From the NCBI RefSeq assembly GCF_006345805.1, contig NW_021833280.1:12035-76034 (forward strand): a stretch of DNA of 64,000 bases, given 5' to 3'. The notes beneath the pieces were generated by a model, which was given only the letters and a program-made list of their open reading frames with translations, made no database searches and was not told where the DNA came from. Shown piece by piece: positions 1,445 to 51,574 of the stretch (its first letter is position 1; each line of letters starts with the position of its first letter). This DNA comes from Octopus sinensis. Taxonomy: Eukaryota. The position numbers were made by a program, and so were the translations under genes.

Positions 1445-1600
1445 GCAGGCGTGGCTGTATGGTAAGAAGTTTACTTCCTAAACACTCCTTCCGGGTTCAG
1501 TCAAACAACGTGGCACCTTGGGCAAGTTTCTTCTTCTATAGCCTCGAGTAGACCAAAGCCTTATTGAGTGGGACACGGAAACTGAAAGAAGCTCGTCGTG

Positions 1601-1656
<56 letters not shown>

Positions 1657-1850
1657 CCTACCGCTCCTTGATAACCTGTGCTGGTGTGTTTACGTTTCCG
1701 TAACTCAATGGTTCGGCAAAAGAAACCTATGGAATAAGTAATAGGCTTTTAAATGAAATAATTAATGGGTTTGATTAAGTCGATTGAAATTCTCCAAGCT
1801 GGTGCTTCAGCATGGCCGTAGCCAACCGACTGAAGTAAGTAAAATATAAA
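1445..1850 (+). mobile_element. tRNA-derived SINE, family A
   Basis: GGCGTGGCTGTATGGTAAG...CCGGGTTCAGTC head, internal (TA)n(TG)n, and a CAGCATGGCCG tail; homologous to 22230-22650. Confidence 0.85.
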
Positions 1851-7873: not shown

Positions 7874-8050
7874 TTTCTTTATTGCCCACAAGGGGCTAAA
7901 CACAGAGGGAGCAAACAAGGACAGACAAACGGATTAAGTCGATTATATCGACCCCAGTGCGTAACTGGTACCTAATTTATCGACCCCGAAAGGATGAAAG
8001 GCAAAGTCAACCTCGGCGTGCTAACGTTTCTGCCAGCTCCCCCCCTTATA
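7874..8050 (-). mobile_element. SINE-B, internally deleted, in a (TA)n tract
   Basis: Tail and GGTCGATAAATTAGGTACCAG body match 24941-25172. Confidence 0.85.
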
Positions 8051-15366: not shown

Positions 15367-15597
15367 AGGCGGCGAGTTGGCAGAACCGTTGGCACGCCGG
15401 GCGAATTGCGTAGCCGTATTTCGTCTGCCACTACGTTCTGAGTTCAAATTCCGCCCAGGTCGACTTTGCCTTTCATCCTTTCGGGTTCGATAAATTAAGT
15501 ACCAGTTACGCACTGGGGTCGATATAATCGACCTAATCCGTTTGTCTGTCCTTGTTTGTCCCCCTGTGTTTAGCACCTTGTGGGTAGTAAAGAAATA
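15367..15597 (+). mobile_element. SINE-B, full length, degenerate 16-bp TSD
   Basis: AGGCGGCGAG...GTTCAAATTCC...AAAGAAATA; flanks GATATAGATCTTTATT and GATATAGGTTTTTAAT match at 13/16. Confidence 0.9.
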
Positions 15598-17778: not shown

Positions 17779-18001
17779 AGGGCGGTGAGCTGGCAGAAAC
17801 GTTAAGCACGCCGGGCGAAATGCGTAGTCGTATTTCATCTGCTGTTACGTTCTGAGTTCAAATCCCGCCGAGGTCAACTTTGCCTTTCGGGGTCGATAAA
17901 TTAAGTACTAGTTACGCACTGGGGTCGATGTAATCGACCTAATCCGTTTGTCTGTCCTTGTTTGCCCCCTCTGTGTTTGGCCCCTTGTGGGTAGTAAAGA
18001 A
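17779..18001 (+). mobile_element. SINE-B with 17-bp TSD
   Basis: TATATCTAATGTTTATT (17762-17778) versus TATATCTTATGTTTATT (18005-18021). Confidence 0.9.
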
Positions 18002-22229: not shown

Positions 22230-22406
22230 AGGAGTGGCTGTGTGGTAAGCAGCTTGCTTACCAACCACATGGTTCCGGGTTCAGTCCCACTGCGTGGCAC
22301 CTTGGGTAAGTGTCTTCTGCTATAGCCTCGGGCCGACCAAAGCCTTGTGTGTGGATGTGATTTGGGTTAGACGGAGAAACTGAAGAAGCCGTCGATATAT
22401 ATATAC

Positions 22407-22443
<37 letters not shown>

Positions 22444-22650
22444 TTGTGTGTCTGTGTTGTCCCCCTAGCATTGCTTGACAACCGATGCTGGTATGTTTAT
22501 GTCCCCGTTACTAGCGGTTCGGCAAAAGAGACGATAGAATAAGTACTGGGCTTACAAAAGAATAAGTCCCGGGGTCGAGTTGCTCGATTAAAGGCGGTGC
22601 TCCAGCATGGCCGCAGTCAAATGACTGAAACAAGTAAAGAGAAAAAGAGT
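22230..22650 (+). mobile_element. SINE-A, full length (reference copy)
   Basis: tRNA-like head, internal (TA)n(TG)n, tail GGCGGTGCTCCAGCATGGCCGCAGTCAAATGACTGAAACAAGTAAA; (TA)n on both flanks. Confidence 0.9.
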
Positions 22651-24940: not shown

Positions 24941-24944
<4 letters not shown>

Positions 24945-25172
24945 CGGCGAGCTGGCAGAAACGGTAGCACGCCGGACGAAATGCGAAGCCGTATTTCGTC
25001 TGCCGTTACGTTCTGAGTCCAAATTCCGCCGAGGTTGACTTTGCCTTTCATCCTTTCGGGGTCGATAAATTAGGTACCAGTTACGCACTGGGGTCGACGT
25101 AATCGACTTAATCCGTTTGTCTGTTCTTGTTTGTCCCCTCTGTGTTTAGCCCCTTGTGGGTAGTAAAGAAAT
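24941..25172 (+). mobile_element. SINE-B, full length, inside a (TA)n tract
   Basis: (TA)n-AAGGCGGCGAGCTGGCAGAA...GTAGTAAAGAAATA-(TA)-rich. Confidence 0.9.
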
Positions 25173-29184: not shown

Positions 29185-31849
29185 AATTGTTGGAAATACC
29201 AGTCGTCACGGGATTATATCAAATGTTAGCCATATTGAAAGTGCGCAAGATATATTTCCAGAAAACATACCGAAACGTGGTATGTAGTATGTTCAGCAAT
29301 TTAACCTTGAAATCTTGGCTGATGTCTTGGAACTGATTCCAGACAATTCTACAGATCTGACGGCTTGCTAACATCTGCCTGCGGCCTGTTTCTAAATATT
29401 TTACAGGATCATATCATCTTTATGGAGCGATTAAATAGCTTGAAACTCAGGTGATTACTACACCTTGCACATGTAATCCGAACCGAAGCAGATGTTGTTC
29501 AAGAAATTGTTTATCCCAGATAGATTTCGGATAAACACATGACTCTCTTCCATTAGCTCTTGTCTCCAAACCCTACCTGTGCCAATGCGCTCAATAAAGT
29601 CAATTGATTTGCGTGAAGGAGCTCCTACGTGGCTTCGCGGTCTGCTAGAATCAGCAGCTAAATTTTCTCATATCTCACTTTAGTGAATCCGACGCAGGTT
29701 TATTTGTCCGTAAATTCCATTAATCAGTGTCCATTCTGTGAAAAATATTCACATCAGTCGAAGAATGGTTTGAAAATAATTTCCGTTCTCCTCATATTCT
29801 TAGCGCACGGTCAAGGAAAGGTCACGAGTCCTGTCCTCCACTAATGGTTAAGTGATGACGCATGGTTTGTGTCAAAAAGATGTGCCAGTATTTCAAAGGG
29901 CCAGCTTTGTCACATTCTGTGTTGCGCTGAATCACCCTGAGAGCGACATTAAGAGTACACAAGTGGCTGTGGAATCCTCAGCCACTTAGCATTTATTTCA
30001 CGAGCAGGTTGTATCGTCAATCGGATCAATTGGAACGCTCATCGTCGCAACCGACCGACGAAGAGCCAATTATTAAGTAAGGTAAAAATAAGAAGGGTTT
30101 GGATGTTGCTACCTTCGAAGCTACGCAGAACCATTTCGGTTAGATTTATTAGGAAGAGATTAAATGATAATATTCTGATTTCATCCAAGTGATCGACACC
30201 ACAAAGAGGACAAATTCAAACGTGAAGAAAATTAACAAAATGTCGCCGGAAAGTAATAGCCCCTTGTGTATCTCCGGTTGACTCTTCTCTCATCTGTTAA
30301 CATTCGATACACCTGAGTGATTTATGTCGATGCTCTGCCCATGTTAAGTAGAAAATTTAGTAAGATATTAGGTGGATCTCACTTCAATATCGAGAATGTT
30401 ACACTGGATGTTTTATAGTATCGAATCAACATTTTAATGTCCATTGGTTTACTTTCGTTCCTTAAGAGCTCACTTTTGTAGGAAAATAAAATCACTTTTT
30501 GAAAATGTAGGCCACTTCATTCGCACAAAGTACTTTCACTTACGCAGGTCCCCAGAAACGAAGAGGAGCCTTATTTCAACAATACTAGTTTAGTTTATAA
30601 ACTAAATATTTTTAAGTATTGGCTATCATTAACCCGAAACCACGTGGTTGCGGAGGAACGTTCTTCATTACACAACTGCGTCTATATTAGACTAAATTTC
30701 ATGTAGAATATTGGTTTCAAATTTTGGCAGCAAGAGGGTAAATCAATTAATGGTACTTATTTTATTGACCCCGAAAGGATGAAATGTAAAGCGGAATTTG
30801 AACTCGGAACGTAAAATTGGACGAAATATCGCTGGGCATTTTGCCCGGCGTGCTAAGAATTACAATTTTGCCTGCTTGTTGCCTTCATTTCATATAAAAA
30901 TCTTATTAAATAGTACAAATTGACAAACTGCAGCAATATAAATTCTAATGGATTAATGTCTTTCATTTTTTACTCGTTGGTTTGTGTGTGTGTGTGGAGG
31001 GGGTATTTTGCCATGATTTTGAAAAAAATTGTTTTAAAATTCCATTACCAAAATTGTAGTCAACCGTGTCCTTTTCTGTCTTGGAGTACACAATCAATTG
31101 TAATATTTTTATTCTTGACAATGTTTCCACTTCCGATTGAATTTTATTTATTTATTTATTCATAGTTTTTTTAATGATCTAGATGTACTAAATATATAAA
31201 AAAAATTATTGTAGAGTAACGAAAAATCGGTTTACGGTTAAAGCTTAAGATTAGAGATTAGGATTTCAAGTAACGCTATCAGAATAGGATTTAGGGTTTG
31301 AGAAATGAGTTGGAGAGGAATTTCAAAGGAACAAAATTGAATTTGCCAATTTTTCTCTCTTTACGAGGAATTCTAAACCATCAAAGTTTAAACAGAAATC
31401 CTAAGAAAATACATTTCTGAATAAATTAAAGATTAACACGATAGGGAGGAGGTGTTAATTACACATCTCTTATAAATATATTATGTATATTACAAAGGCG
31501 GCGAGCTGGCTCGATCATTACACCGCCGGAGAAAATGCTTAGCAGCATTTTATACGTCTTTACGATCTGAGTTCAAAAGCCACCGAGGTCAACTTTACTT
31601 TTCTTCTCTTCGGCGTTGATAAAATAAAGCACCAGTTCTTAAGTGGGGTCGATGAAATCGACTAGCCCCTCAACTAAAAAATCCAGGCCTTATGTCTTTA
31701 GTAGAGAGGATATTACATGTCATTATATATTTCATTTACATGAGACAAAGATTAAAAAGATATTGGCTTGATTGTCGTTGCTAGACGGCATCGTAGTATC
31801 CACTTTAAGCCAGGCTGATTGAAAGACATCGATGATTTGAAAAGTATAT

Positions 31850-33814: not shown

Positions 33815-34342
33815 ATAAATAAAACATGCATATATACATACATATATGTACGTACCTACCTCTACATGTATATATACATGCATATATGGGTATACATTAG
33901 TTAGTGTATGTATCTTTTAAAATTATTACAGGGAAGCGGTTGTCATACTTATAAATACATCACAATTAACGATCCATATGATTGGGCTATATTAGAGTCA
34001 GAAGCGAGCAACCCCAAAATTGGCGAATTAATAGCAAAGAGAAAATTAATAAAACGGGAAGCACGTGACCCGGGATAAATTACATTTTTCACAGGATTTA
34101 TATTCATATCAATATTGGTTTGTATTATATGTATGTAATAGCAGGATAATACACTAATATATGCTAATCATATGGATCATTAATTAAGGGGGTTAACTGG
34201 TAGACTCATTAGAACGACGGACGTGATAACCTTGCATTATTGGTTTCGGCTCTTTACGTTCGGGGTTCAATTCCCGCTGAGTTAAAGTTCGCCCTTCATT
34301 CTTCCGGGTCGATAAAATAATGTTGCTCTCCTTGGCAATTAC

Positions 34343-34745
34343 TTACTGTTTTACTTGTTTCAGTCATTTGACTGCGGCCATGCTGGAGCACCGCCTTTAA
34401 TCGAGCAAATCGACCCCAGGACTTATTCTTTTGTAAGCCTAGTACTTATTCTATCGGTCTCTTTTGCCGAACCGCTAAGTAACGGGGACATAAACACACC
34501 AGCATCGGTTGTCAAGCAATGCTAGGGGGACAAACACAGACACACAAACACACACACGCATATACATATATATACATATATACGACGGGCTTCTTTCAGT
34601 TTCCGTTTACCAAATCCACTCACAAGGCATTGGTCGGCCCGGGGCTATAGCAGAAGACACTTACCCAAGGTGCCACGCAGTGGGACTGAACCCGGAACCA
34701 TGCGGTTGGTTAGCAAGCTACTTACCACACAGCCACTCCTGCGCC
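34343..34745 (-). mobile_element. SINE-A, full length
   Basis: Reverse complement of 22230-22650. Confidence 0.9.
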
Positions 34746-35179
34746 TATACTTGGAGAAGTTATTAAAATATTGGACAAATGCTTTGTGAAATTTGTTCCT
34801 AATCGCAATGTTCTCATTTCAAATCCTGCTGAGGACAGATTATGAACAAAACAAAAAGGTAAGTCCAACACACTCGGCACTTCTAAGGTTGTTTATAAAA
34901 CAGGTTCTCACATTCCAAAGTCTTTTATTTAGCGTAAAAATAGACGGCATTTGTTGTCAGGGATCGCTTAAATTAATGGCCCAGACCGGTCAGCCTGAAT
35001 TTGAGAAGTACAGGTTTCGATTAGCTGCAGCGGCTTGAAGGCCACTTTGTTTTCCGTCTTCTAAGGGTAGTTACACAATCATCTAAGCTGTTTTCACAAC
35101 TATTATGTGCTCGAGACCTAATTTTCTGTTAAATATATACATTTATTTATAAGTATACACATACACACACACTCCACTG

Positions 35180-37181: not shown

Positions 37182-37334
<153 letters not shown>

Positions 37335-37553
37335 ATCTGACAGACAGACGCAAGTCAAATGGGCTCCACGTAAGTTAGTATTTTTGTACGTTCAAAAGTG
37401 TATATTGACAAATATTTTGTGCTTAAAAGTTTGCAACAACATCCACTGTAAACCTTTGATAAATATCGACACAAAATTTTGCCCCTTGTGGAAAATTTAA
37501 AAGAAAAAATTCTCATAGCCTTCGTGGTTTCATTTAGCCATTTTATTTCCAAA

Positions 37554-39649
37554 ATGGCCACTGGTCACCACGAGGCTGAGGTGCAAGTCAAGCGTGACGC
37601 AGAGGCAGAAAAACAGGATGCTCTGTTAGCATACGCTGAACCTGACAACTCCACCACCATCAACATCGACAACAGCAACAAATACAAAACAAAGGTCGCA
37701 AGGCCAAGCACCGTCAACACCATCAGTAAGTCCACCACCAACCACCGACAACAACACCATGGCAGAATCTGCTACTAAAACTACTATCCCTACTAAAGAC
37801 ATCGCCACCAATAACAATACCAACACACCATCACCGCCACCAAAGACCGTGCCGTCAATGCTACTAATACTACTAACACCACCGCCGTCACCAAGAACGA
37901 CAATAACAACAACAACAACAACACAACAACAACGACGACGACAACAACAATTCCCTTCAACCACTGCTCACTCCATCACCAACAAGTGAAAATAACGACG
38001 ACAAGCAAACGAAATGCCGAAATTTGCGCTAATGCAGGACTAAATTACGCAGGCAATTTCCACCCCTTGCTAGTTGCATAATCAGCAACCACAAACCTAC
38101 AACCCACACCCCTGCCATCAACACCAACACCACCGGCAGTAACAACAATAACAAAACAACAACAACTTCGCCGAGGCGATAAAAGAAAAGGTAACAAAAG
38201 TTTCGTTTACTACACAAAGATTAAAGATTGCAGAAACCTTATTACAAATCAAAACGGAAAAATACTCTTACACATACCTCAGCACATACTGAATGAGGAG
38301 AAAAAAAGACAATTGTATATAAAATCACAAATAAAAAAACTAAAAGTCCAGAAAAGGCAAGCACAGACAAAGTCGAAAAGTGCTTGTATCTGGGGATACA
38401 AGGATTGTGTGACTTGGGCGAACAAGTTCGCACACGTACAGGTGGTTTTTCAGAATGAAGAGTTGGCGAAGAAATTCTCAACGATAACCCTTCATTCTGA
38501 TGAACTAACGTTGACACCGAGTTACCTCGGCCAGAAGGTGACGAAAGTCATTATCAGTGGTGTCCCCCAAGTGACTACAACACTGTGGATAACATCCGCC
38601 TTAACATCCGAAATGGAGGACTTAAACATCCTAGATATCGGTGTTTCGGAAAACAAGGACTGGCTGGGAAAGAGAATAGAGTTCCTCTTCCACATAAGTC
38701 AAGAGGACATAAATAAAATCCCCACCCACGTACATCTTGAGGATGGCCGCAAGTTATACGTAGTAGTCGAGGGCAGAAGGCCACGATGCTATACATGTGG
38801 CAGTGAGGCACACCTCAAAAAGGAGTGCAAATCTGCCGCAAAATTACAACAACAACAAGCCACAGGAAAAATCACAAAAGCCAGGATTATTGCCCACACC
38901 ACAATATGGACAGCTAGTCAAGAAGCTGTATGCGGAAATGCAGGAAAAACAACAAAGAACAAGCCAACCCAACCAAACAACACCAACACCAGCGCCAAGA
39001 ACAGAATCATCACCACCAACAACAAATAAACCAATTCCAACACCAAGAATAACAACGAAGAAGACAAGCACCAAGGATGTAGGAGAGACAATAACCACAA
39101 CAAACCCCCCAGCAACACCCTCCCCGCGCACCACAACAATATCTACAACCGCACAAACACACCCAGACGCTTTACCCTTGCCCCCTGCTGATTCGTCAGA
39201 CTTTTCATCTAACGATGAAAGTTCGACAGAATGGCAAATAGCCACAGGGGTAAAAGAAAAAGATCAAGAAAAACCAAACAAGAAATCGCAACCAAAGCAG
39301 GGAGATACCTGAACCCTGAAAACTCCATACACAACAAAACAAGCACCAACACCCACAAAAACAATGCTATCAGCGATAGACACAAAAGACTCCAAACTAA
39401 TGGAGTACATCACAGGATACACAAACATTTGTGAAGATGACTTTAAAAATAGCAATCATCCACGCACTACACCACCCAAACACATCAAAATACTACACAT
39501 CACACAAAACACAACACCACAAACTCAAAGCCCTCTTCCCAAATGCTGTGGGGGGTTTCCAGAAATATCTGTCCCAAAAACTATATAGAAACCTCCTCGA
39601 AGACACATCAAAGAACGAGGAAGCCAAAACTTTCGACACAAGTAAGTAA
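37554..39649 (+). pseudogene. Tx1 ORF1 (gag-like), frameshifted
   Basis: ATG at 37554; Thr/Asn-rich ends; core ...VVEGRRPRCYTCGSEAHLKKEC (CX2CX4HX4C, 38787-38828). Confidence 0.7.
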
Positions 39650-39699
39650 CTCTCTGTACTTTCATTTGTGTGTTTTAAAGCACACACCCCAATAGAATC

Positions 39700-42600
39700 A
39701 TGGTCAAGATTGGTTGTGTGAATGCGCGTGGCTTGGGGTCTCCTTGGAAACAAGGATACCTCCTAAATGACATCAAGTCACATGATTGGGAATCATAGCC
39801 ATAAGTGAGACCAGACTCCACGAGCCACGGGCCCTAAAGTCCATGTTTGGCGGACAGTTTAACATTTATTTCGCTCCCTGTCTGCCGAGGATGGGCGGTA
39901 GTGGCACCGCGGTACTTTTTCACAAGAGCCTGGATCTCGAAGTCAAGACGATATTCGTAGACCCGGAGGGTAGACTGATCGTTCTGGATGTTGACGGCAG
40001 CAATGGGTGCGCTTTTCGACTCGTATCAGTCTACGCACCGGGCGGATTTCTTTCGACGTCTAGAAGTATTCTTGGGAACGTCTCGTCCTTTACTCTTAGT
40101 GGGGGATTGGAATGTACCTTGGACACGCATGTAGACTACGTGGGTAGAGACAGAAACAGAAGGGGATGCAAATGCCTCAGAGACCTGCTCAGACGATTCC
40201 ACTGTCTGACAGGTACCGACTCGACCACCCAAATGCACCAACGTGGACATGGAGCAACCGCAGTGGGTCGTCGAGATCGTATCTAGATAGGATACTGTGT
40301 AGGACAGTAGACAAGGATAACTTAGGATGTCCACAATTCCACACAGTCAGCTACACGGATCACAAATTGGTGACGTGTACGCTAGACTTAGATAAGGCAC
40401 ATAGACAGGGTCCTGGGTACTGGAAACTGAACGCATCATTCCCGTCCAGACAAGTTTTCAGAGACCGGATTAGCACACTAGTAAAGAGGGAGCCATCATC
40501 AACAACAAATGGTGGTTTGCCCTCAAGAGAGCAGTAAAAGCAGAAGCGATTAGGTACAGCAAAGCACTAGCCATAGATAGAAATAGAGTAGAGGGTGAGC
40601 TAGTTAAGAAGCTAGAAGAGGCAATTAGAAGCGGCATCGCATCCGACGTTTTGGCGGCGAGGTTGGCCCTCGACCAACACTTCAACGCCAAACACGAAGG
40701 ATGTGCTGTCAGAGCTAGGATGCGTGCTCTAAGGAACGAAGGTGTTGGAGCCGCGAGAGAGGCCCGGGTGGCAGAGGCGCAACAGGGCAACAAAGCCACC
40801 ATTCGGTCACTGGTAGATGAACAGGGGCGCGAATTGCTCGAGCCAAGTAAAATGTGTGAGGCCTTTCAGCAGCATTTTGCCCGACTGTTCGGGACGAGTG
40901 GAGGGCAAGAACGTAGGGTAGACTTCAGTGCCTACCTACATAGCCTGCCACGACTCTCGACAGGGTGCTGCGAAGGTGCCATCACGGCGGCGGAAGTGCG
41001 GGAAGCGATGGCAGAATGCTCGAGGGACAAATCACCGGGTTTGGATGGTCTACCCTACGAATTTTACTATTGTATGCCAGACTTGTTTGGAGACGTCTTG
41101 GCAGCGGTATACTGCAACTGGCAGCAAAACGGGAGCATACCCGGTTTTGTGAGTCGAGGAGCTGTAACTCTGCTGAAGAAAGATCCAAAGAAGGGAAACA
41201 TTATAGATAACTTTAGGCCAATCACTCTGCTCAATGCAGACCTGAAAATTTTGACAAAGTGTTAGCCAAGAGGTTGGCGCTTGTCATGGAGAAACTGGTC
41301 GACACGCACAAAAACGTGCCTCCATCTGATGCGCTACATCATAGACAGGGTAGTTAACGAACCTGGCATGGGTGGCCCTGATCAACTTGGATCAATCGAA
41401 AGCCTTTGATAGGGTAGACCATCGATACTTGGAGGCAGTCCTGAGAGCGGCTGGTTTCGGTCCCGTCTTCCGCGGCTGGATAGCTGCCTTGTACAGAGGC
41501 ATCCGTTCGGTAATTCGCGTAAATGGACATCTATCGAGACCCTTCGACATTGCACGTTCGGTCCGTCAGGGATGCCCCCTCTCGGCGCTTCTATACGTAT
41601 TGACTCTTGAGCCACTACTGCGGAAGCTGGCGACTCTGAGGGGCATCCCGCGAGAATTAGGATGCGGGACGAGCGTGTCTGCATACGCGGACGACGTCAC
41701 CGTCATAGTGTCAAGCCACGAGCACATCGAGCGGGTCGGCGAGACACTGAAAGACTACGAAGCGGTGACAGGAGCAAAAATCAACCGGAAAAGTCAGTGG
41801 GCTTGCGGCTCGGCACCTGGAGAAGCAAGCCCATGCCGTCCACCAGTACCTCCGTCGTGGGACGCTGGACAGACGGCCCGGTTGAGTTGCTCGGGGTCTG
41901 GTTCGGTCCGGACCTCCAAATGGAGAAGAACTGGAACGAGATAACGAGTAGGGTGGTCACTCTCGCCCAGCAATGGGCCGAGAGGAAACTGTCCCTAAAA
42001 GGTCGGGCGGAGGTGGTGAACGCGTACATCGCGTCCATCATCTACTACCGCCTGACCGTCGTACCTTGTCCCGACCCTACCATCACCAAACTAGAACGCA
42101 TCCTCTTCCGCTTCTTGTGGAAAGGATGCGTCCCGATGGTCAGGCGATCCATTTGCTGTCAACACCCGTTAAAAGGAGGGCTGGGCATGCCGTGGTTGAT
42201 GATGCGCAGACACGCGCTGAGACTGCGACATCTCCGGCTCTATGTAGACGACGGTGAACAGGTGTGGTCGCCGTTTGTGAGGCACGCATTCCCGCAACTC
42301 GTCTCCATGACCGAACTACAGTCGTGGATCAAAAAGAGGCCGAAGAAGGGCGAATGGCACCGCGAGTGTCGCGTTGCTCTCAAGCAACTCTGCCGTCCCG
42401 GGTCGACCTTGAGTGACTTCAACACAACCAAAGCATTCTATAGGGGATTAGTGGAGGGGAGGTACGACGACGAGCTCGGGGCAAACCTGGGCGTCGACGA
42501 GGAATACCTGACCCGCCTGTTTCAAACGACTTTCGGCCCGGGACCTATGGACAACTTCCAGAGATCCCTGGCCTGGCGGTGCTACCGAGAAGCGCTACCC

Positions 42601-43067
42601 GTTCGGGATAAGCTCTATAGGCATGGCTCGAGAAACACGGGCCGACCTGCCCGAGATGCGGGCAGAGCGACGAAACCGCTCTGCACGCAATCGTGCAGTG
42701 TCCAGCAATTTCCCACCTGTGGGCTTATGTCGAACGACTGCTGTCACGTGTGGGACGTGTCGGTTTATCAGCCGAGTCTATCGTTAATATCGTCACGCCT
42801 CCTTCCTTCAAACGGGAAGGAAGAGCTATTTTTATCATACTTGTGGCTATGGCGAAAGAATGTATCTGGTGGACGCGTCTGAAAGGATTAGAGACAAACA
42901 CTTTCCTCTCTGGTCAATCTCTCATCAACTTCTTCAAGTATCACTTGAAGAAAAAAGTGAGAGTAGAGAGGCAAGTTTTGTCTAGTGAATGTTTTAAAAA
43001 AAGATGGGTGAATGTAGCAAGGATGGCACGTATGAATGACGAAGCCACCTTGACTATGATTCTATGA
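39700..43067 (+). pseudogene. Tx1 ORF2 (APE endonuclease, reverse transcriptase, CCHC) with several frameshifts
   Basis: MVKIGCVNARGL, IAISETRL, PGYWKLNAS, KSPGLDGLPYEFY, NFRPITLLNADLKI, LDQSKAFDRVDH, SVRQGCPLS, AYADDVT, CPRCGQSDETALHAIVQC. Confidence 0.92.
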
Positions 43068-43424
43068 ACCGTAAAAATTAATACAGAGAGTTGCTTATTT
43101 GCAAAAAAAAAAAAAAAAAAAAAGATAAAATTGTGACTTCATTGACCGAGGTTACCGTGGTCTTTTCGTAGGCTTTTCTTTCCACGGGTAAACCTCACCT
43201 GTCCTCCCCTTTACACTTCATATTGACATTTCTGTGATAACGATCCCTATGATCAATTTTTTTCTCTCCCCTTTTTTTTTTAACCCCCCCCCTTTTTGTC
43301 CTCTTTCTCTCCTTTTACGATCCCTTTTGATCGACCCCCCCTTTTTTTTTTAACCTCAAAAGAAAAGCTCTACCTTGTAATTTGTTCTATCTGTGTGCAG
43401 CCCTGTGTGGCTAATAAAGAAACA

Positions 43425-43501
<77 letters not shown>

Positions 43502-44445
43502 CTATCTATACTATCTATCTATCATCTACATAATACATACATAAATTACATGCATACATATATATATATATATTATTTAATATATATATATAATATAATA
43601 TTAAGTAGAGACAAAACACTATTTTGCAAAACAAACAAGGAAAGACTTAATCAATACATAAAATTTTATAAAAAGTCAAAAAAACCGCAACTACAATTGT
43701 TTCTGTCGTGATCGACAATCTAATATATATATTAGCTGCTGAAGAGGGGTTTTCTTTGTGTAATTGTCCTGTATTCTATTTTTTTGTTGTTTTAAATATA
43801 TGTCCAGTTCCTTTGGTTGTGTCTATGTTTTCGTTTCTCATTGTTTCGACGTCCTTTGGGTGTCCTGTACTCATAAATGCGTGTATATGTACATGTAGAG
43901 GTAGTATGTACATATATGTTTATATATATGCATATGTTTTTTTATTTATTAATATATTATATATATATAATAATATATATATATATACACGCACACACAC
44001 ATACACACACATACACACACACATAAGTAGTCAGTTACTCTAACTAAAAGAACCCTAACCTCTGTCTTCCGTTCTATAAAAATGTCTGCGCTTGTGTCGT
44101 GTTGAAGGTAAAATGACGAAGAGCGCAGCATTGAATGTCGAAAATGTCATACGCCATGCCGTTCGATGCTAAACCATATGAAATTCTAATAAATCATTTT
44201 CCAAAGTGTCATGTCCATCACCCCGATATATGCACCCGATTGAGGTGTATTTATGTACCCGATAGAAGAGGTGATGTAAACCTTTGCGTTCAAAGACACC
44301 GACGCATATTTGAAGAGTGCTTAGTGCAGTTTAGGTGCTGACATATATACATACATGCATATATATATATGTGTATGTGTGTGTACATATGTACATATAT
44401 GTACATTCATGGATACGTATATTTATATGTATATAAGTCTGTATG

Positions 44446-44516
<71 letters not shown>

Positions 44517-44732
44517 CTAACTATATATATGTGTGTATATATATGTATGTATGTATATATATATATGTGTATATATATGTATGTATATATATATATCTAA
44601 CTCTATATATGTGTGTATATATATGTATGTATGTATATGTATATGAATATATGTATATATGCATGTATATATATGTATGTATATATATATGTATATATAT
44701 AAATATATATATATGCATACATACATAAATAC

Positions 44733-44786
<54 letters not shown>

Positions 44787-45113
44787 TATATATATAATAT
44801 ATATATATATATATTATATATATATATATATATATGAACCAAAGCAGAAGTGATACGACGTAAAATCCGTTAATTGATCGATCGGTGGCGGAATTGGTTG
44901 CAACCGGGTGTGAACGTTTTACACCCGTCTAACTTCAGAAAGAAATAATCGGGAAGAACTAAACCATGAAACGACATTTGTGGAGAGGTCAACCGGTGCA
45001 GATATTGCAAAATATGTCAGATTTGCTTTATAAATACCCCTATGGGTACTATAATCCTTGTCTTCACCCCTTCCTCATTTTGAACATCATCATCATCATC
45101 GTCGTCGTCGTCG

Positions 45114-45146
<33 letters not shown>

Positions 45147-45505
45147 CCATCATCATCGTCCCCACCGCCACTATCACCACCGTCCATCATCTTCATTAGC
45201 AATATCAACTTCATCACGATCAACGTCATCATACACATCAGCATCATCATCATTATCATTATCATAATGATGATGATCATCGGCATCATTTTCATAAACT
45301 TCCCCCTACCACCACCACCACCACCAGCACTATCATCATCATCATCAAAGTGCATCACCACACGACAAGGGTGCAACAAGTCCTGGAGTTTGCTTCCCCC
45401 TCCCCTACCGAATACGATGGTGGGACAAGCAAGACATTGTTATTGGAACCTTCCTTAACCCTTCTCAAAATTCCTGTGGTTCCTTGCTGTTTCTCTCTCA
45501 TCACA

Positions 45506-45584
45506 CTGCCCAGTGGCTAGATCGTTGCGTCGTTTCTGCCCAGTGGCTAGATCTCTGCCACTGCCCAGTGGCTAGATCGTTGCG
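45506..45584. repeat. Three copies of the 18-mer CTGCCCAGTGGCTAGATC
   Basis: Copies at 45506, 45536 and 45561 with unequal short spacers. Confidence 0.9.
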
Positions 45585-46310
45585 ATCCCAGTACAACACT
45601 CTAGGTGTTATATCTAAGTGTGAAGATCTCATTCATATCAACGGCGACACAAGAGGGGCACGTGTCACAAAAACTTATTTTGAAAGCTAACATTGTTGTG
45701 TGGACCAGCGGATATTGGCACCGTAGAATAGAATGCTGATAACAGCAAACATAAGTACTATAGGACAATGTGGTTACTCTAACTAAAAGAAATGGCAACC
45801 AAAATTTTCCTCAAATTCCATTCCACCTTCTGAAATGAGGATGTATTCCATGATGTAGTTATAAAAGAATTAAATATGAAAAAATAATATCGATGGGATG
45901 CTCCTGGCTGGAATGTTTTTTATCATAACTCTGCTGGGTCAGAGCGGAATTGGAGACAAAAAAATAAAAAAAAGGAGAAGTAGCAGCAGAAGTAATAGTA
46001 GCAACAACAGAGAGAGCATTTCTGCGGAAGCATCGACATAGTTTTCGGTCTTCTACCAAAGCCTGCTAATCTAGGAATTGACAGTATTCTACGGAACACA
46101 CAACTTGCTGTCTGGTGTTCTTCAGGCAGGAACGAAATCATCAGTTCTTTTTCCCCAATCAAATTCTTACGCTGTATATGCAAATATGACACAACAACAA
46201 CAACGACAAAAATAATGATGATGATGACGATGGTGATGATGATGGTCACTCCCGTCGATTTCGACCTATGAATTTTGAAGGAGTGGCTTTAAAAAATACA
46301 TACTAATACC

Positions 46311-46544
46311 TATTTCTTTACTACCCACAAGGGGCTAAACACAGAGAGGACAAACAAGGACAGACAAATCTGATTAAGTCGATTATATCGACCCCAGTGC
46401 GTAACTGGTACTTAATTTATCGACCCCGAAAGGATAAAAGGAAAAGCCGACCTCGGCGGAATTTGAACTCAGAACATAAAGACAGACGAAATATGGCTAC
46501 GTATTTCGCCCGGCGTGCTAACGTTTCTGCCAGGTCGCCGCCTT
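46311..46544 (-). mobile_element. SINE-B, full length, perfect 16-bp TSD
   Basis: AATACATACTAATACC at 46295-46310 and 46545-46560. Confidence 0.92.
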
Positions 46545-46569
46545 AATACATACTAATACCATCTCCCTA

Positions 46570-48430
46570 TCCAGCTGAGGTGGTTTTGAGAGAATTTAAA
46601 GAGGGATATTGTTAGGAAATGGAGTGGGAGAGATTAAACACCCACAGTGCATGGACGATTTAAAGCCTTAATGAGAAAATGAAGATCAACTTAACATATT
46701 GGTGAACACAGTAAGAATTGTCACGAATGACAGAGACATGGAATTTGGTATCAATAAATGTGCCATTCTGACATTGAAGAGGGGAAATGCAAAGCAGTGT
46801 GGAGGAATTAAACTGCCAAATAATCAGGCAATGGAAATTCTCGAGAGTTTGGGAATCAGATACCGTCAAAACAGAGAAATAAAGGAAACCATTTTAAATG
46901 AGTTCTTCAGAGGCACCAAGTTAATATTGAAGTCTAAGTTAAATTTTGGTGACTTTGTAAAGGTAATAATTTCGAGATTTGCATCAGTTGTAAGGTATGT
47001 GTCAGGGAAATTGGAAAAAAGAACTGGACGAAGAACAGCATGATATTGAGAGAAAAACTTGGAAAATAATGGTAACTTTGCATAAAAGGGTAGATGTGGA
47101 CGGAATGTACAGGGATTGTAAAAATGGAGGTAAGGGATTGATTATTTTGGAGGATTCTGTGAATATGGAAGGGGAAAGTCTCAATCAGTTAAAGAAAGAA
47201 CTGAAGAATTGTTAGCAGCGGTGAAGAATGCAAACATACAAAGAGAAGGACAAAAAAAAAGAAAAAAAAGATTAAATACTTGAAGAAGGAAGCGAAGTTA
47301 TATGGGAAAAAAAACAACATTTGCAGCCTCAGTTTATGAAGAATGCTGAAGTGGAAAGAAGCGAAGATACATGGAATCGGTTGGAAAAGGGGATTCTCAA
47401 AGAAGCAACAGAAGGATTAATCGTGGAATCTCAGGATCAAACCCTGTGAACAAACAGCACAAAGTGTATATAGCAGGAGTTAATGTGTTGGCATTAAGCA
47501 GGTTGTGTGATGAACGAGGAGAAACAGTGAACCACTAAACATGTGAATGTTCTAAACACACCCAGAAATGGTACAAATCTTGGAAACATAATAATGTTGC
47601 GAAGATCGTGCACTGGGAAATGTGTAAGAATAATGGATTTCCGTCCGGACACGAGTGGTATGAACACGCACCAGAAATAGTGATCCTGAATGATGAATTA
47701 AGTTTCTTGTCCTAGAGTATAACAGACCAGATATTTTTGTGTTTGAGAAGAGAGAGTGGACTTGCTAGTTAGTTGATGTGGTCAGTCCATTTGATACAAG
47801 AATAAAAATATATATATAAAGAAGATAGCTATATAGGCGCAGGAGTGGCTGTGTGGTAAGTAGCTTGCTTACCAACCACATGGTTCCGGGTTCAGTGTCT
47901 TCTACTATAGCCTCGGGCCGACCAAAACCTTGTGAGTGGATTTGGTAGACGGAAACTGAAAGAAGCCCGTCGTATATATGTATATGTATACATATGTGTG
48001 TGTGTGTGTTTGTGTGTCTGTGTTTGCCCCCCCCCCCCAACATCGCTTGACAACCGATGCTGGTGTGTTTACGTCCTCGCAACCTAGCGGTTCGGCAAAA
48101 GAGACCGATAGCATAAGTACTAGGCTTACAAAGTAATAAGTCCTGGGGTCGATTTGCTCGACTAAAGGCGGTGCTCCAGCATGGCCACAGTCAAATGACT
48201 GAAACAAGTAAAAGAGTAAAGAGTAATATACTAAGACATGAAGAGAGAGATTGTTGTATTGCAGAGTAAGTGAAGTCTTACCAATTGTGATTGGAGCTTA
48301 AGGAACGACGGCGAAGAGGTTCAAGGATGGACAGACGAGATAGGCTTGCAGAAGCATATAGAATACATACAAGTTTGTTAGGAAAAGCGAAGATCAAGGC
48401 CCTCAAAGTGCGAGCGATGATCTGCGAATA
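46570..48430 (+). pseudogene. R4/Dong-like non-LTR retrotransposon, 3' part, decayed and interrupted by SINE-A
   Basis: MDDLK, VNTVRIVTND.MEFGINKCA.L.LKRG, LILKSKLN, LHKRVDVD.MY...KNGGKGL, RLCDERGETVNH..CEC...HNNVAKIVHWEMC, PIVIGA.GT. Confidence 0.8.
47832..48226 (+). mobile_element. SINE-A inserted in the R4/Dong relic
   Basis: Head with small deletion, internal (TA)(TG) tract, CR1-like tail with AAAGAGT repeats. Confidence 0.9.
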
Positions 48431-49371
48431 ATGTTTATCATCGAAGAGTAGGCCATGGCAGGATTTGAACTTTTAATGTAAAGAATCAGACAAAAACCAA
48501 CATTACAGAACGATACGTGCAACATTGTAATGTTTAACGTTTCCGAGAATCATGTCTGGTATCTTATTTAACGACCCAGGAAGACTGAAAAGCAAAGCTA
48601 ACCTGGTGAGATTTGAACACAGAACGTATAGTATGAGAATGCATTTCATCTGGCAATCTACTGGTTCTGCTAATTCGTTTCCTGTTTCTTGGGAATCAGA
48701 TAACATTCGGTGACCATGGAGATGACCATCTCTTAAATCCGATGATGAGCGAGGGGCGGTGCCATCCAGTGTAATTACACAGAATCATATAACGTCGTCG
48801 GAGGAATGGCTGAAGCTCACAGAAATATATTCAACGTGTCACAGCGTAACCCGCTGGCATTTTGATCTCTGTTGACAACGCTTCCCGAAAACTTGAAGCA
48901 ACAGTATTATACAGGCATTCCATAGACTCATACATACACACACAAACACACGTAAGCACGCACATGCATATACGCATGCATTAATAAATATTTGCAACCA
49001 ACCATGCATCCATATACGCATAGAAACATACACGCATATTTGCATCTAGACATAACCACGTATGCACACACACATAATTTGTATTCGCACAGAAACGTAT
49101 ATATTACATACATACTAAGTTACATAACAGCAATTTCACATACTCGCTTACACACGTGTACATACATACATACATACATTACATACATACAAACCTACCG
49201 ACATTATCTATATACACATATACATACATGCATGGATACATACTTATAAGCAAACACCCATAAATATATACGTATAGTCATACATACACAATGCATATAT
49301 ATATACTTCCATAAATTTATGAATTCATGTGTACAGGCATACATTACATAATGCGCGTATACATACGTAGG

Positions 49372-49970
49372 CACAAACGTGGCTGTGTGGTAAATAGTTT
49401 ACCTCCTAACCACGTGGTTCCGGGTTCAGTCCCACGGCGTGGCAACTTGATCAAGGGTCTTCTACTATAGCCTCGATCTGGCCAAAGCCTTGTGATGAAT
49501 TTGGTAGACGGAATCTGAAGGAAGCTCGTTTTGCCTTTCATCCTTTCGGGGTCGATAAATTAAGTACCAGTTACGCACTGGGGTCGATGTAATCGACTTA
49601 ATACCTATGTCTGTCCTTGTTTGTCCTCTCTGTGTTTAGCCCCTTGTGGGTAATAAAGAAATAGGTATATATATATATATATTATATATATATATATATA
49701 TAAAACTATCTGCCTGTCTGTCGGACTGTCTGTTATATGTGTATGTATGTTTGTGTCTTTGCCTTAGTGTTTGTACCCCACCACTGATAGACAACTGATG
49801 TTTGTTTTTGTTTTGTTTTTTTTCATCTCAGTAACTTAGCGGTTCGGCAAAAGGGGCCGATAGAATAAATAGTAGGCTTTAAAAAATTAAGTCCTGGAGT
49901 CGATTCATTAAACTAAAAATTCTAGAATTTGGCGCCCTAGCATGGCCGCAGTCTAATGAGTGTAACAAGC
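49372..49970 (+). mobile_element. SINE-A split by a 5'-truncated SINE-B (49529-49665)
   Basis: SINE-A head 49372-49528, SINE-B 3' half, microsatellite, then SINE-A tail ~49760-49970. Confidence 0.8.
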
Positions 49971-50355
49971 AACAGCAAAGATGAAAGAAAAATACACACA
50001 CAGATGCATATATGCATAAATACATAAATACATACAAACATGCGTGTATGCATGCATACTTATGTACATACATACATACATACATACATACATACATACA
50101 TGCATACATACATACATACATACATACATCCGCAGCTCGAAGCGACAAAACGCATATTTGTCGTGAGAGACCATTTATCGAAAATACGATGAATACTATC
50201 TCCATCTTTGGAGCCACAACTATCAGCCCCGGGTAAATAACTGGTTAATCTTGAGATGAATCAACTATGGGAGCCTTTTGTACAAGGTCGTAGGGGTTTT
50301 CGACCGAAACTTGAATTTACCAAGCAGAGACATGGCTGGAAACATCAGCAACGCC

Positions 50356-50729: not shown

Positions 50730-51574
50730 AAGGCGTCGAGATGGCAGAAACGTTAGCACGCCAGGCGAAATGCTCCGTGGTATTTCGTCTGTCTTTACGT
50801 TCTGAGTTCAAATTCCACCGAGGTCGACTTTGCCTTTTATCCTCTCGGGATCGATAAATTAAGTACTAGTTGCATACTGGGGTCGATCTAATCGACTGGC
50901 TCCCTCCCCCAAATTTCGAGCCTTGTACTTAGAGTAGAAAAGAATATTTATAAGGCGACGAGCTGGCAGAATCGTTAGCACGCCGGGCGAAATGCTTAGC
51001 GGTATTTTGTCTGCCGCTACGTTCTGTGTTCAAATTCCGCCGAGGTCGACTTTGCCTTTCATCCTTTCGGAGTCGATTAAATAAGTACCAGTTACGTACT
51101 GGGATCGATGTAATCGACTTAATCCGTTTGTCTGTCCTTGTTTCCCCCCCTCTGTGTGCAACCTCTTGTGGGTAGTAAAGAAATAGGTATTTCGCCTGTC
51201 TTTACGTTCTGAGTTCTAATTCACCGAGGTCGAATTTGTGTTTCATCCTTTCGGGGTCGATAAATTAAGTACTAGTTGCATACTGAGGTCGATCTAATCG
51301 ACTGGCCCCCTCCCCCAAAATTTCGAATCTTACCTAGAGTAGAAAAGAATATTTATAAGGCGGCGAGCTGGCAGAAACGTTAGCATGCCGGGCGAAATGC
51401 TTAGCGTATTTCGTTTGTCTTTACGTTTCGAATTCAAATTTCGCCGAGGTCGACTTTTCTTTTCATCCTTTTGGGGCCGATAACTTACGTACCGGTCGCG
51501 TACTAGAGTGGATCTAATCGACTGGCCCACTCCTTCAAAATTTCGGGCCTTCTGCTTAGAGTAGAAAAGAATAT
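50730..51574 (+). mobile_element. Head-to-tail cluster of four SINE-B-type units with two alternative 3' tails
   Basis: Units ~50730-50950, 50951-51185, 51186-51355 (headless) and 51356-51574. Confidence 0.85.

What the first reader, a model, noticed from the sequence alone, without database searches (positions are those of the whole stretch)
43370..49661. SINE-B 3' tail matches the 3' end of the Tx1 LINE
Seen: LINE 43382-43422 TTGTTCTATCTGTGTGCAGCCCTGTGTGGCTAATAAAGAAA versus SINE-B 49621-49661 TTGTCCTCTCTGTGTTTAGCCCCTTGTGGGTAATAAAGAAA gives 34/41 ungapped identity. Both end at the same position and share an upstream CCTTGT. The copy near 51150 even has TGTGTGCAACC. Established: SINEs often borrow the 3' end of the LINE that mobilises them; this is best documented for CR1, L2 and RTE, while mammalian L1 relies on poly(A). 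Inference: a stringent-type SINE-Tx1 partnership, supported independently by the 16-17-bp TSDs.
Basis: partly seen in the sequence, partly recalled or inferred. Interest (0 to 1): 0.8.

Follow-up and report, generated by a model that had tools for sequence, protein, structure and literature searches.

The report
Octopus SINE borrows an L1/Tx1-like LINE tail
A short octopus jumping element (SINE) ends in the same ~45-60 bases as a family of L1/Tx1-like LINEs, so it most likely copies itself with that LINE's enzyme; this kind of partnership is well known in general but rarely documented for L1-type LINEs.

Summary
Window 43382-43422 and 49621-49661 match at 34/41 ungapped. The LINE end is the only non-SINE-B site in the window with at least 26/41 matches (background 10.7 +/- 2.9).

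Independent copies of the same LINE family end in the same motif, ...GSCCCTTGTGGYYAATAAA(A)GAAA followed by (ATT)n or (ATCT)n. These are L003, L029, and three independent insertions in Argonauta hians; L004 carries part of the motif. Their 3'UTR bodies are at chance-level identity (0.43-0.58). The last 45 nt are 0.69-0.81 identical. So the tail is native to the LINE, not an appended SINE remnant.

Seven SINE-B copies in the window carry the tail in register. Two Argonauta SINE families carry it too. Four SINE-B copies have 14-18-bp TSDs and none has poly(A). A small hairpin (loop CUUGU) shows G-C/C-G/A-U exchanges at one pair.

The other LINE in the window is RTE-like and has a different tail, which matches a different SINE (SINE-A). 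That serves as an internal control.

Caveats:
- The Tx1 clade was not tested by phylogeny; only L1-superfamily architecture was shown.
- Stringent recognition is inferred.
- No genome-wide LINE library was available.

Verdict: a new member of a known kind, of moderate interest.

The parts
37185..37332 (.). (ATCT)n microsatellite directly upstream of the LINE's presumed 5' end
   Evidence: Sequence read; run located. The same repeat follows the LINE's 3' end.
37336..43422 (+). Degenerate L1-superfamily (Tx1-like) LINE, about 6.1 kb. The 5' boundary is inferred from the edge of the microsatellite; the 3' boundary is firm.
   Evidence: ORFs. Pfam RT. tblastx collinearity with the near-intact Argonauta element in L007. 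Homologs carry PF00078 + PF13966.
38313..39029 (+). ORF1 fragment with one CCHC zinc knuckle
   Evidence: Pfam zf-CCHC, E = 0.0026, which is below the gathering score. It aligns to Argonauta ORF1 (L007 3558-5477).
39700..40540 (+). ORF2 apurinic-type endonuclease region, frameshifted
   Evidence: tblastx to L007 5537-6352. That Argonauta ORF has PF03372 at E = 5e-11.
40651..41944 (+). ORF2 reverse transcriptase region, frameshifted
   Evidence: PF00078, E = 4.8e-19. A relative, P0002, matches human L1 ORF2p at 1.5e-21.
41860..43067 (+). ORF2 C-terminal region (zf-RVT type Cys/His motif in relatives); stop codon at 43065-43067
   Evidence: PF13966 in P0001-P0006 and in the L007 ORF.
43068..43362 (+). 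Body of the 3'UTR, poorly conserved. It includes an internal A-run at 43104-43124 that is not the element's end.
   Evidence: L001 aligns across and beyond the A-run, to about 43395. UTR body identity between family members is 0.43-0.58, against 0.48 for shuffled sequence.
43363..43422 (+). Conserved LINE 3' tail shared with SINE-B. The predicted hairpin is 43399-43412 (AGCC-CUGUGU-GGCU), followed by AAUAAAGAAA.
43426..43501 (.). (ATCT)n run following the LINE tail; a degenerate continuation reaches about 43525
   Evidence: Argonauta L028 has the same GAAACAT(ATCT)n junction.
49530..49661 (+). Tail 49602-49661; hairpin 49639-49651.
49370..49975 (+). SINE-A copy that hosts the nested SINE-B in its internal (TA)n. 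It ends in an RTE-type tail.
24943..25171 (+). Full-length SINE-B, 96.5% identical to the window consensus, inserted in (TA)n
46313..46542 (-). Full-length SINE-B with a perfect 16-bp TSD, GGTATTAGTATGTATT
15368..15595 (+). Full-length SINE-B with an imperfect TSD of about 14 bp
17781..18001 (+). Full-length SINE-B with an 18-bp TSD (1 mismatch)
50954..51183 (+). Full-length SINE-B, variant tail with TGTGTGCAACC, inside a head-to-tail SINE cluster
7874..8045 (-). 5'-truncated or rearranged SINE-B with a 13-17-bp TSD
58590..61413 (-). Second LINE, RTE-like, used as an internal control. One 883-aa ORF (APE + RT), a short 3'UTR, and an (AAAATC)n-like end. Its tail matches SINE-A, not SINE-B.

Best explanation
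SINE-B is a non-autonomous retroposon of about 230 bp. It has three parts: a pol-III-type head with a B-box-like GTTCAAATTCC, a core of about 75 bp, and a tail of about 55-60 nt. The tail was copied from the 3' end of an octopod L1-superfamily (Tx1-like) LINE family. The most likely mechanism is as follows. The LINE's ORF2 protein recognises the last ~35-45 nt of its own RNA. That stretch is a small hairpin, GSCC-CUUGU-GGSY, usually closed by UGUU/AAUA and UCU/AGA, followed by AAUAAAGAAA(U). The protein then starts target-primed reverse transcription there. SINE-B RNA carries the same module and is used in trans. This gives insertions in TA-rich DNA with 14-18-bp TSDs, frequent 5' truncation and no poly(A). 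Shown here: the shared tail, its nativeness to the LINE family and its selective conservation there, and the TSDs. Inferred: recognition by ORF2p, the role of the hairpin, and which LINE subfamily is the actual driver. The (ATT)n-ended subfamily represented by L029 and L007a fits SINE-B better than the (ATCT)n-ended copy in the window.
For: (1) The tail identity is in register at the element ends. It is 34/41 ungapped, E = 8e-07, and is the unique non-SINE hit in the window. A profile built from the tails finds exactly the 7 SINE-B copies plus the LINE end in the window at E below 1e-7.
(2) The tail is native to the LINE. Independent relatives are 65-82% identical in ORF2 nucleotides. They come from metagenome contigs (L003, L029, L004 in part) and from Argonauta hians (two independent insertions in L007 and one duplicated insertion in L028). 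All end in ..CCCTTGTGGYYAATAAA(A)GAAA plus a simple repeat. L001 is collinear through the 3'UTR up to the start of the tail.
(3) Conservation is selective. The 3'UTR body is 0.43-0.58 identical, against 0.48 +/- 0.04 for shuffled sequence. The last 45 nt are 0.69-0.81 identical, and the last 600 nt of ORF2 are 0.68-0.73 identical.
(4) The SINE-B consensus is 76-77% identical to the LINE tails over 45 nt and still 66-70% over 60 nt. L029 matches best by eye and by profile score.
(5) Three SINE types with different heads or bodies carry the same tail: Octopus SINE-B, an Argonauta SINE-B-like family, and an Argonauta short tRNA-like SINE.
(6) The hairpin forms standard pairs in 93% of cells, against 82% in shuffles. 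Pair 43/53 is G-C in 8 sequences, C-G in 7 and A-U in 1. Sliding the partner columns drops pairing to 12-47%. In single-sequence folds the inner stem appears in 17 of 21 tails and the outer UCU/AGA closure in 14 of 21.
(7) SINE-B has TSDs of 14-18 bp, 5'-truncated copies and no poly(A).
(8) Internal control: in the same window the RTE-like LINE tail pairs with SINE-A, not with SINE-B.
(9) Precedent for stringent L1-clade pairs exists in maize, sorghum and Chlamydomonas (PMC3472496).
Against: - No functional test was possible.
- The thermodynamic support for the hairpin is weak. Single-sequence z-scores run from -0.1 to -2.0, and RNAalifold keeps only 4 bp at -4 kcal/mol.
- The C-G version of the covarying pair is shared by all SINE-B copies, so it may be a single event.
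- Octopus SINE-B lacks the (ATT)n/(ATCT)n repeats that follow the LINE tail, whereas classic stringent pairs usually share the terminal repeat.
- Part of the motif is AAUAAA. That could be conserved in the LINE as a polyadenylation signal rather than for RT recognition.
- The window LINE is a dead copy with several frameshifts. It belongs to a subfamily that looks microsatellite-associated, while SINE-B is dispersed in TA-rich DNA.
- Other LINE clades of this genome (CR1, Dong-R4, other RTE) could not be screened for a better tail match.
Confidence: 0.75

Rival explanations
1. The tail on the window LINE is a SINE-B remnant, or an unrelated insertion, that happens to sit behind this one LINE copy. 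On this view the true LINE end is the A-run at 43104-43124.
For: There is a 21-nt A-run 37 nt after the ORF2 stop. L1-type elements often end in poly(A).
Against: L001 aligns across and beyond the A-run as far as the start of the tail. L003, L029, L007 (two insertions) and L028 all carry the motif at the end of their own, otherwise diverged, 3'UTRs, in two genera. No SINE-B core sequence precedes the tail in any LINE copy.
Confidence: 0.03
2. The shared ancestry of the tail is real, but the tail is a relic. SINE-B would be mobilised in a relaxed way through its A-rich end (AAAGAAA), or by a different LINE clade that carries the same or a better-matching tail.
For: L1-clade LINEs are mostly of the relaxed type. 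[quoted passage not shown] SINE-B lacks the LINE's terminal microsatellite. No genome-wide LINE screen was possible, and scans of public collections returned only chance hits.
Against: The last 45 nt are selectively conserved within the LINE family across Octopus and Argonauta while the rest of the UTR has randomised. Three different SINE types retain the same tail. The hairpin pairing is kept through base exchanges. SINE-B has no poly(A). The only other LINE in the window has an unrelated tail.
Confidence: 0.17
3. The direction of transfer is reversed: the LINE family captured its 3' end from a SINE, or both took it from a third element. The similarity would then say nothing about who mobilises whom.
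For: Template switching can move tails in either direction. A weak tail-like motif also occurs in the LINE's 5' region at 37477-37510 (nhmmer E = 0.02).
Against: The tail is present in all sampled subfamilies of the LINE, which are 65-82% identical in ORF2 nucleotides, and in two genera. The SINEs that carry it differ in head and body. Whatever the direction of transfer, a LINE that keeps this end under selection uses it, so any RNA with the same end is a candidate template.
Confidence: 0.05

Closest known systems
Stringent L1-clade SINE/LINE pairs: maize ZmSINE2/ZmSINE3 with LINE1-1_ZM, sorghum SINEs, and Chlamydomonas SINEX-3_CR with L1-1_CR (Ohshima 2012, PMC3472496)
   Same: An L1-superfamily LINE lineage keeps a conserved 3' end of about 45-50 nt while the rest of the element diverges. 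The 3' end has a putative hairpin with compensatory changes. tRNA-type SINEs carry the same end. My measurement pattern is the same (last 45 nt against the whole element).
   Different: Those cases are in plants and a green alga, and the elements end in poly(A). Here the host is an animal (a cephalopod). The LINE tail is followed by (ATT)n or (ATCT)n, the SINE has no poly(A), and the sequence motif is unrelated.
SINEU with Tx1-Mar in crocodilians (Kojima 2015, PMC4494074)
   Same: A Tx1-clade LINE group is inferred to mobilise a SINE family in an animal.
   Different: That inference rests on shared target preference (Mariner-N4_AMi) and shared snRNA-derived 5' heads. SINEU ends in poly(A), and no shared 3' tail is reported. 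Here the link is the 3' tail, and the SINE does not visibly share the LINE's microsatellite association.
Classic stringent pairs, such as eel UnaL2/UnaSINE1 and zebrafish ZfL2 (Kajikawa and Okada 2002; Hayashi 2014, PMC4176376), and the RTE-tailed SINE-A/RTE-like LINE pair in this same window
   Same: The SINE and LINE share the terminal ~40-60 nt, including a stem-loop next to the 3' end. The SINE-A/RTE pair is seen directly in the window.
   Different: Those LINEs belong to the L2, CR1 and RTE clades. In UnaL2 the terminal repeat is shared by SINE and LINE and is needed for initiation. Octopus SINE-B lacks the LINE's repeat.
Microsatellite-specific Tx1-clade LINEs Kibi (TC)n and Koshi (TTC)n (Kojima and Fujiwara 2004, as cited in PMC4494074)
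   Same: The window LINE has (ATCT)n on both sides. An Argonauta relative ends in (ATCT)n and has degenerate ATCT-like repeats before its 5' end.
   Different: Target specificity is not demonstrated here: only two loci were seen, and no empty sites. The repeat could instead be an element-made 3' tail. A sister subfamily ends in (ATT)n without an obvious (ATT)n target at its 5' junction.

Membership tests
SINE/LINE pair with a common 3' tail (stringent type) | The 3' end of the SINE is similar to the 3' end of the LINE, in register with the element termini | tested here: met
   34/41 ungapped. 76-77% over 45 nt against three LINE copies. It is the only non-SINE hit in the window.
SINE/LINE pair with a common 3' tail (stringent type) | The tail is native to the LINE family and more conserved than the rest of the 3'UTR | tested here: met
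   Independent LINE copies in at least two genera carry it (L003, L029, L007 twice, L028; L004 in part). Last 45 nt 0.69-0.81 identical against 0.43-0.58 for the UTR body.
SINE/LINE pair with a common 3' tail (stringent type) | A conserved stem-loop in the tail, supported by compensatory changes | tested here: inconclusive
   The 4-bp stem pairs in 93% of cells. One pair shows G-C, C-G and A-U, and sliding controls collapse the pairing. But the energies and z-scores are weak, and the longer stem is seen only in single-sequence folds.
SINE/LINE pair with a common 3' tail (stringent type) | SINE and LINE share the same terminal simple repeat | tested here: not met
   The LINEs end in (ATT)n or (ATCT)n. 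Octopus SINE-B ends ...GAAATA and then the TSD follows. Argonauta SINEs end ...GAAATCTAT(T), at most 1.5 units.
SINE/LINE pair with a common 3' tail (stringent type) | Tail-dependent trans-mobilisation of the SINE by the LINE's protein | not testable with these tools
   This needs a retrotransposition assay.
L1 superfamily, Tx1 clade | Two ORFs, with ORF2 = APE endonuclease + RT + C-terminal Cys/His (zf-RVT) domain | tested here: met
   PF03372, PF00078 and PF13966 are found in the near-intact Argonauta relative. RT is found in the window copy. PF13966 is found in P0001-P0006.
L1 superfamily, Tx1 clade | The RT is closer to L1 than to other LINE groups | tested here: met
   Among solved structures, human L1 ORF2p scores 1.5e-21 and R2 proteins 2e-12. 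The comparison is limited to what is in the PDB.
L1 superfamily, Tx1 clade | Phylogenetic placement of the RT inside Tx1 (with Tx1L, Keno, Kibi, Koshi) rather than the L1 M/F or plant L1 lineages | not tested
   No Tx1 reference sequence could be reached with these tools. The indirect argument is this: octopus and mollusc repeat surveys list 'L1-Tx1' as the L1-superfamily class present (PMC13282606, PMC10294476, PMC11203168). The other LINE classes listed as recently active in octopus (RTE, CR1, Dong-R4, Hero, R2) do not fit this architecture, from my knowledge of those clades.
L1 superfamily, Tx1 clade | Sequence-specific insertion, which is common in the clade but not universal | tested here: inconclusive
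   (ATCT)n flanks the window copy on both sides, and ATCT-like repeats sit at both ends in Argonauta L028. No empty site was available, and the (ATT)n subfamily shows no clear target repeat.
tRNA-derived SINE | A 5' head derived from tRNA with internal pol III A and B boxes | tested here: inconclusive
   A B-box-like GTTCAAATTCC is present in SINE-B. There is no Rfam tRNA match at E <= 1 and ARAGORN finds nothing. The Argonauta short SINE gives sub-threshold tRNA hits (21.8 bits, E = 0.045).
tRNA-derived SINE | Short, dispersed, flanked by TSDs, with 5'-truncated copies and no coding capacity | tested here: met
   Seven copies of up to 230 bp, 92-96.5% identical to the consensus, with TSDs of 14-18 bp; two are 5'-truncated.
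Relaxed, poly(A)-dependent L1 mobilisation (Alu/L1 type) | The SINE and LINE end in poly(A) and share no specific 3' sequence | tested here: not met
   No copy of SINE-B or of the LINE family ends in poly(A), and a specific tail is shared.

The most novel reading that the evidence does not exclude
An animal L1-superfamily (Tx1-like) lineage uses stringent, hairpin-dependent recognition of its own 3' end and has done so since before Octopus and Argonauta split. This one tail module has been captured repeatedly by different pol-III heads, and it underlies a sizeable share of the octopod-specific SINE expansion. This would be the first animal counterpart of the plant and algal stringent L1 pairs. 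It would support the idea that stringent recognition is ancestral for the whole L1/Tx1 group and was relaxed only in some lineages.
Probability: 0.45. Interest if true: 0.6.

Novelty: new member of a known kind. Interest (0 to 1): 0.5.

Why it matters
Octopus genomes are unusually rich in SINEs. A 2026 O. vulgaris annotation puts them at 11.6% of the genome and leaves almost all recently active SINE families unclassified and without a named partner (PMC13282606). Assigning a major tail type to the L1-Tx1 group would tell annotators how to classify these SINEs. It would also identify which LINE's activity limits their spread. More generally, L1-clade LINEs are the standing exception to the common-tail rule: only 3 of 58 known pairs are L1-clade, and all 3 are in plants or algae (PMC3472496). 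An animal Tx1-like example with a conserved hairpin would make it possible to test in a second kingdom whether stringent 3'-end recognition is ancestral in the L1 group.

Tried and rejected
- The search for related loci on metagenome contigs with an ORF2 C-terminal alignment found no confirmed relative.
- Exact-pattern scans for the tail in genome contigs and metagenome contigs returned 9 and 10 loci. All match only the pattern itself and are bacterial or chance hits; I estimate about 17 expected by chance in genome contigs. None contains SINE-B.
- A second protein search with the Argonauta APE/RT half gave few hits and no informative names, so it did not help with Tx1 classification.
- Rfam at gathering threshold and ARAGORN found nothing in the window. 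Rfam at E <= 1 gave no tRNA hit for the SINE-B head.
- A literal search for SINE-B and tail strings in the paper library found nothing.
- I considered whether SINE-B's alternative tail (..CCCTCCCCCAAATTTCGAGCCTTGTAC..) derives from the 3'UTR of the more distant relatives L030 and L031. BLAST gave only 9-10-mer matches, and those contigs share no octopus repeats, so I dropped the idea.
- I first read the element at 49370-49661 as a chimeric SINE subfamily. I rejected that in favour of a nested insertion once the rest of SINE-A was seen downstream.
- Albertin et al. 2015 was not available in the library.

Full report
**1. The observation**

blastn inside the window gives E = 8e-07. I slid the SINE 41-mer over both strands. 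Only the seven SINE-B copies and the LINE end at 43382 reach at least 26/41, against a background of 10.7 +/- 2.9. The 17-mer TGTGGSTAATAAAGAAA with up to 2 mismatches occurs 8 times against 0.06 expected. The upstream CCTTGT is at 43373-43378 and 49615-49620. The TGTGTGCAACC variant is at 51153-51163.

**2. What the two elements are**

*The LINE.* It lies on the + strand from about 37336 to 43422.
- It has an ORF1 fragment with one weak CCHC knuckle.
- It has a frameshifted ORF2 with RT (PF00078, 4.8e-19) and a C-terminal region. Close relatives of that region carry PF13966, zf-RVT.
- A near-intact relative in Argonauta hians (L007) has an intact 639-aa ORF1. Its ORF2 is in two pieces with PF03372 (APE), PF00078 and PF13966.
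- Among solved structures the RT is closest to human L1 ORF2p (1.5e-21, against 2e-12 for R2).

This is L1-superfamily architecture. I could not run a phylogeny against Tx1 references, so 'Tx1' is an inference. Octopus and mollusc repeat surveys list L1-Tx1 as the L1-superfamily class present (PMC13282606, PMC10294476, PMC11203168). From my knowledge of the clades, the other LINE classes listed as active in octopus do not fit this architecture.

*SINE-B.* It is about 230 bp long.
- Its head carries a B-box-like GTTCAAATTCC.
- Its core is about 75 bp (TTTGCCTTTCATCCTTTCGGGGTCGATAAATTAAGTACCAGTT...).
- Its tail is TTTGTCTGTCCTTGTTTGTCCCCTCTGTGTTTAGCCCCTTGTGGGTAGTAAAGAAA(TA).
- Seven copies lie in the window, 92-96.5% identical to their consensus.
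- Four copies have TSDs of 14-18 bp and none has poly(A).
- Rfam does not recognise the head as tRNA.

So 49530-49661 is a 5'-truncated SINE-B nested in a SINE-A.

**3.

I fetched DNA around ORF2 homologs.
- L001 is 82% identical in ORF2 nucleotides. It is collinear with the window's 3'UTR across the internal A-run (43104-43124) and up to the first bases of the tail, where the contig stops.
- L003 (75%) ends ...GGGCCCTTGTGGCCAATAAAAGAAATC(ATT)n.
- L029 ends ...TCTATGTTTAGGCCCTTGTGGCCAATAAAGAAACGATTATT.
- L004 ends ...CTCTTGTGGCCAAT followed by a CA-rich run.
- Argonauta L007 holds a near-full-length copy ending ...GCCCTTGTGGCTAATAAAAGAAATA(ATT)4. It also holds a second, 5'-truncated copy ending ...GACCCTTGTGGTCAATAAAAGAATT(ATT)n.
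- Argonauta L028 holds two segmentally duplicated copies. One ends ...GCGCCCTTGTGGCTAATAAAGAAACAT(ATCT)14, the same junction as in the window.

Between the window copy, L003 and L007a, the 3'UTR body is 0.43-0.58 identical, against 0.48 +/- 0.04 for shuffled sequence. The last 45 nt are 0.69-0.81 identical, which is as good as or better than the last 600 nt of ORF2 (0.68-0.73). The tail is therefore an old, selectively maintained part of this LINE family. It is not a SINE fragment stuck to one copy.

**4. Which elements carry the tail**

A profile built from the tails finds 8 sites in the window: 7 SINE-B copies and the LINE end. It finds more than 15 sites in 17 kb of Argonauta DNA. The Argonauta sites belong to three kinds of element: the LINE, a SINE-B-like family with a related core, and a short SINE with sub-threshold tRNA similarity that forms a three-copy tandem array. 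So different heads and bodies share one tail. That is what is expected if the tail is the module needed for mobilisation. The SINE-B consensus is 76-77% identical to the LINE tails over 45 nt and 66-70% over 60 nt. The (ATT)n-ended copies, L029 and L007a, resemble SINE-B more than the window's (ATCT)n-ended copy does.

**5. Structure**

RNAalifold predicts a 4-bp stem with loop CUUGV (CUUGU in most copies). It sits at 43399-43412 in the LINE and 49639-49651 in the SINE.
- On 18 tails, 93% of cells form standard pairs, against 82% in shuffles.
- One pair is G-C in 8 sequences, C-G in 7 (all of them SINE-B) and A-U in 1 (an Argonauta LINE).
- Sliding the partner columns drops pairing to 12-47%.
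- In single-sequence folds the stem is usually extended by UGUU/AAUA and UCU/AGA. The inner stem appears in 17 of 21 tails and the outer closure in 14 of 21.
- Energies are small and z-scores run from -0.1 to -2.0.

I therefore treat the hairpin as plausible but not established. Part of the motif is AAUAAA, which could also serve as the LINE's polyadenylation signal.

**6. Control and rivals**

The window holds a second LINE on the minus strand at 58590-61413. It has one 883-aa ORF with APE and RT, and it is RTE-like. Its short 3' end, AATGGCGGTGCCCCAGCATGGCCACAGCTCATTAGCTGAAAC, does not resemble the SINE-B tail. It does match the tail of SINE-A, AAAGGCGGTGCTCCAGCATGGCCGCAGTCAAATGACTGAAAC. So the window contains two separate SINE/LINE tail pairs, and the method tells them apart. 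I could not screen the remaining LINE clades of the genome. Scans of public collections returned only chance hits. That leaves the main open rival: a relic tail with relaxed mobilisation, or mobilisation by another LINE clade.

**7. Comparison with what is known**

Sharing of 3' tails between SINEs and LINEs is textbook knowledge for the CR1, L2 and RTE clades. For the L1 clade it is rare. [quoted passage not shown] All three are in maize or Chlamydomonas. The signature there is the same one I measured here: a conserved last 45 nt and a hairpin. For Tx1 proper, Kojima (PMC4494074) inferred that Tx1-Mar mobilises SINEU in crocodilians. That inference rests on shared targets and heads, and SINEU has poly(A) tails rather than a shared 3' sequence. 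Within the searchable library I found no description of an octopus SINE with an L1/Tx1 tail. Repbase and Dfam entries could not be checked. I file this as a new member of a known kind.

**8. Verdict**

Three points remain unproven: the clade label, the 'stringent' mechanism, and the identity of the driving subfamily. No step needed referral.

Noticed in passing
window 58590-61413 (- strand); SINE-A copies at about 22230-22650 (+), 34340-34770 (-), 1450-1830 (+), 49370-49975 (+): A second, RTE-like LINE with an 883-aa APE+RT ORF. Its 3' end matches the tail of the large composite SINE-A (about 40 of 50 nt). This is a classic RTE-type SINE/LINE pair in the same window.
   Followed up: partly
window 37185-37332 and 43426-43501; L028 3540-3590, 11787-11806, 12200-12235, 17860-17915: The Tx1-like LINE has (ATCT)n on both sides. 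Argonauta relatives end in the same GAAACAT(ATCT)n and have degenerate ATCT/GTCT/ATCC repeats before the 5' end. This may be microsatellite-targeted insertion, as in the Tx1-clade elements Kibi and Koshi, or an element-made 3' repeat. A sister subfamily ends in (ATT)n.
   Followed up: partly
window 50732-51570; L007 2900-3365: SINEs abut each other head-to-tail. There are four in the window cluster and three tandem short SINEs in Argonauta, separated by spacers of only 9-12 nt. This suggests insertion next to the tails of earlier copies.
   Followed up: no
window 50732-50945, 51186-51345, 51359-51570, 31497-31670: The SINE-B head and core also occur with a different, shorter tail (...CTGGCTCCCTCCCCCAAATTTCGAGCCTTGTACTTAGAGTAGAAAAGAATA). 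This looks like tail swapping on one SINE body. No partner LINE was found for this tail.
   Followed up: partly
window 37477-37510: A weak copy of the tail motif (TTTGCCCCTTGTGGAAAATTTAAAAGAAAAAA) lies in the LINE's 5' region (nhmmer E = 0.02). A similar AATTTTTGCCTTGT is present in the 5' region of the Argonauta L028 copy.
   Followed up: no
protein P0003: A protein 64% identical to this LINE's ORF2 C-terminus is deposited at NCBI as a 'zinc-binding domain-containing protein' of a Herbaspirillum MAG. This is probably cephalopod DNA contaminating a bacterial bin.
   Followed up: no
L028 4500-11806 and 13000-17915: Two LINE copies in Argonauta share the same downstream flank for more than 150 nt. 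This is a segmental duplication of LINE plus flank, not two independent insertions. The first copy has lost the end of ORF2.
   Followed up: partly
L030 7380-7400; L031 7255-7275: More distant relatives (35-42% amino-acid identity, non-octopod contigs) lack the terminal motif. They do carry a similar small hairpin, GGC-CTTGT-GCC or GGC-CTCGT-GCC, about 70-90 nt before an AATAAA near their ends.
   Followed up: no
window 43104-43124: A 21-nt A-run lies 37 nt after the ORF2 stop, inside the 3'UTR. It could be mistaken for the LINE's poly(A) end, but relatives align beyond it.
   Followed up: yes
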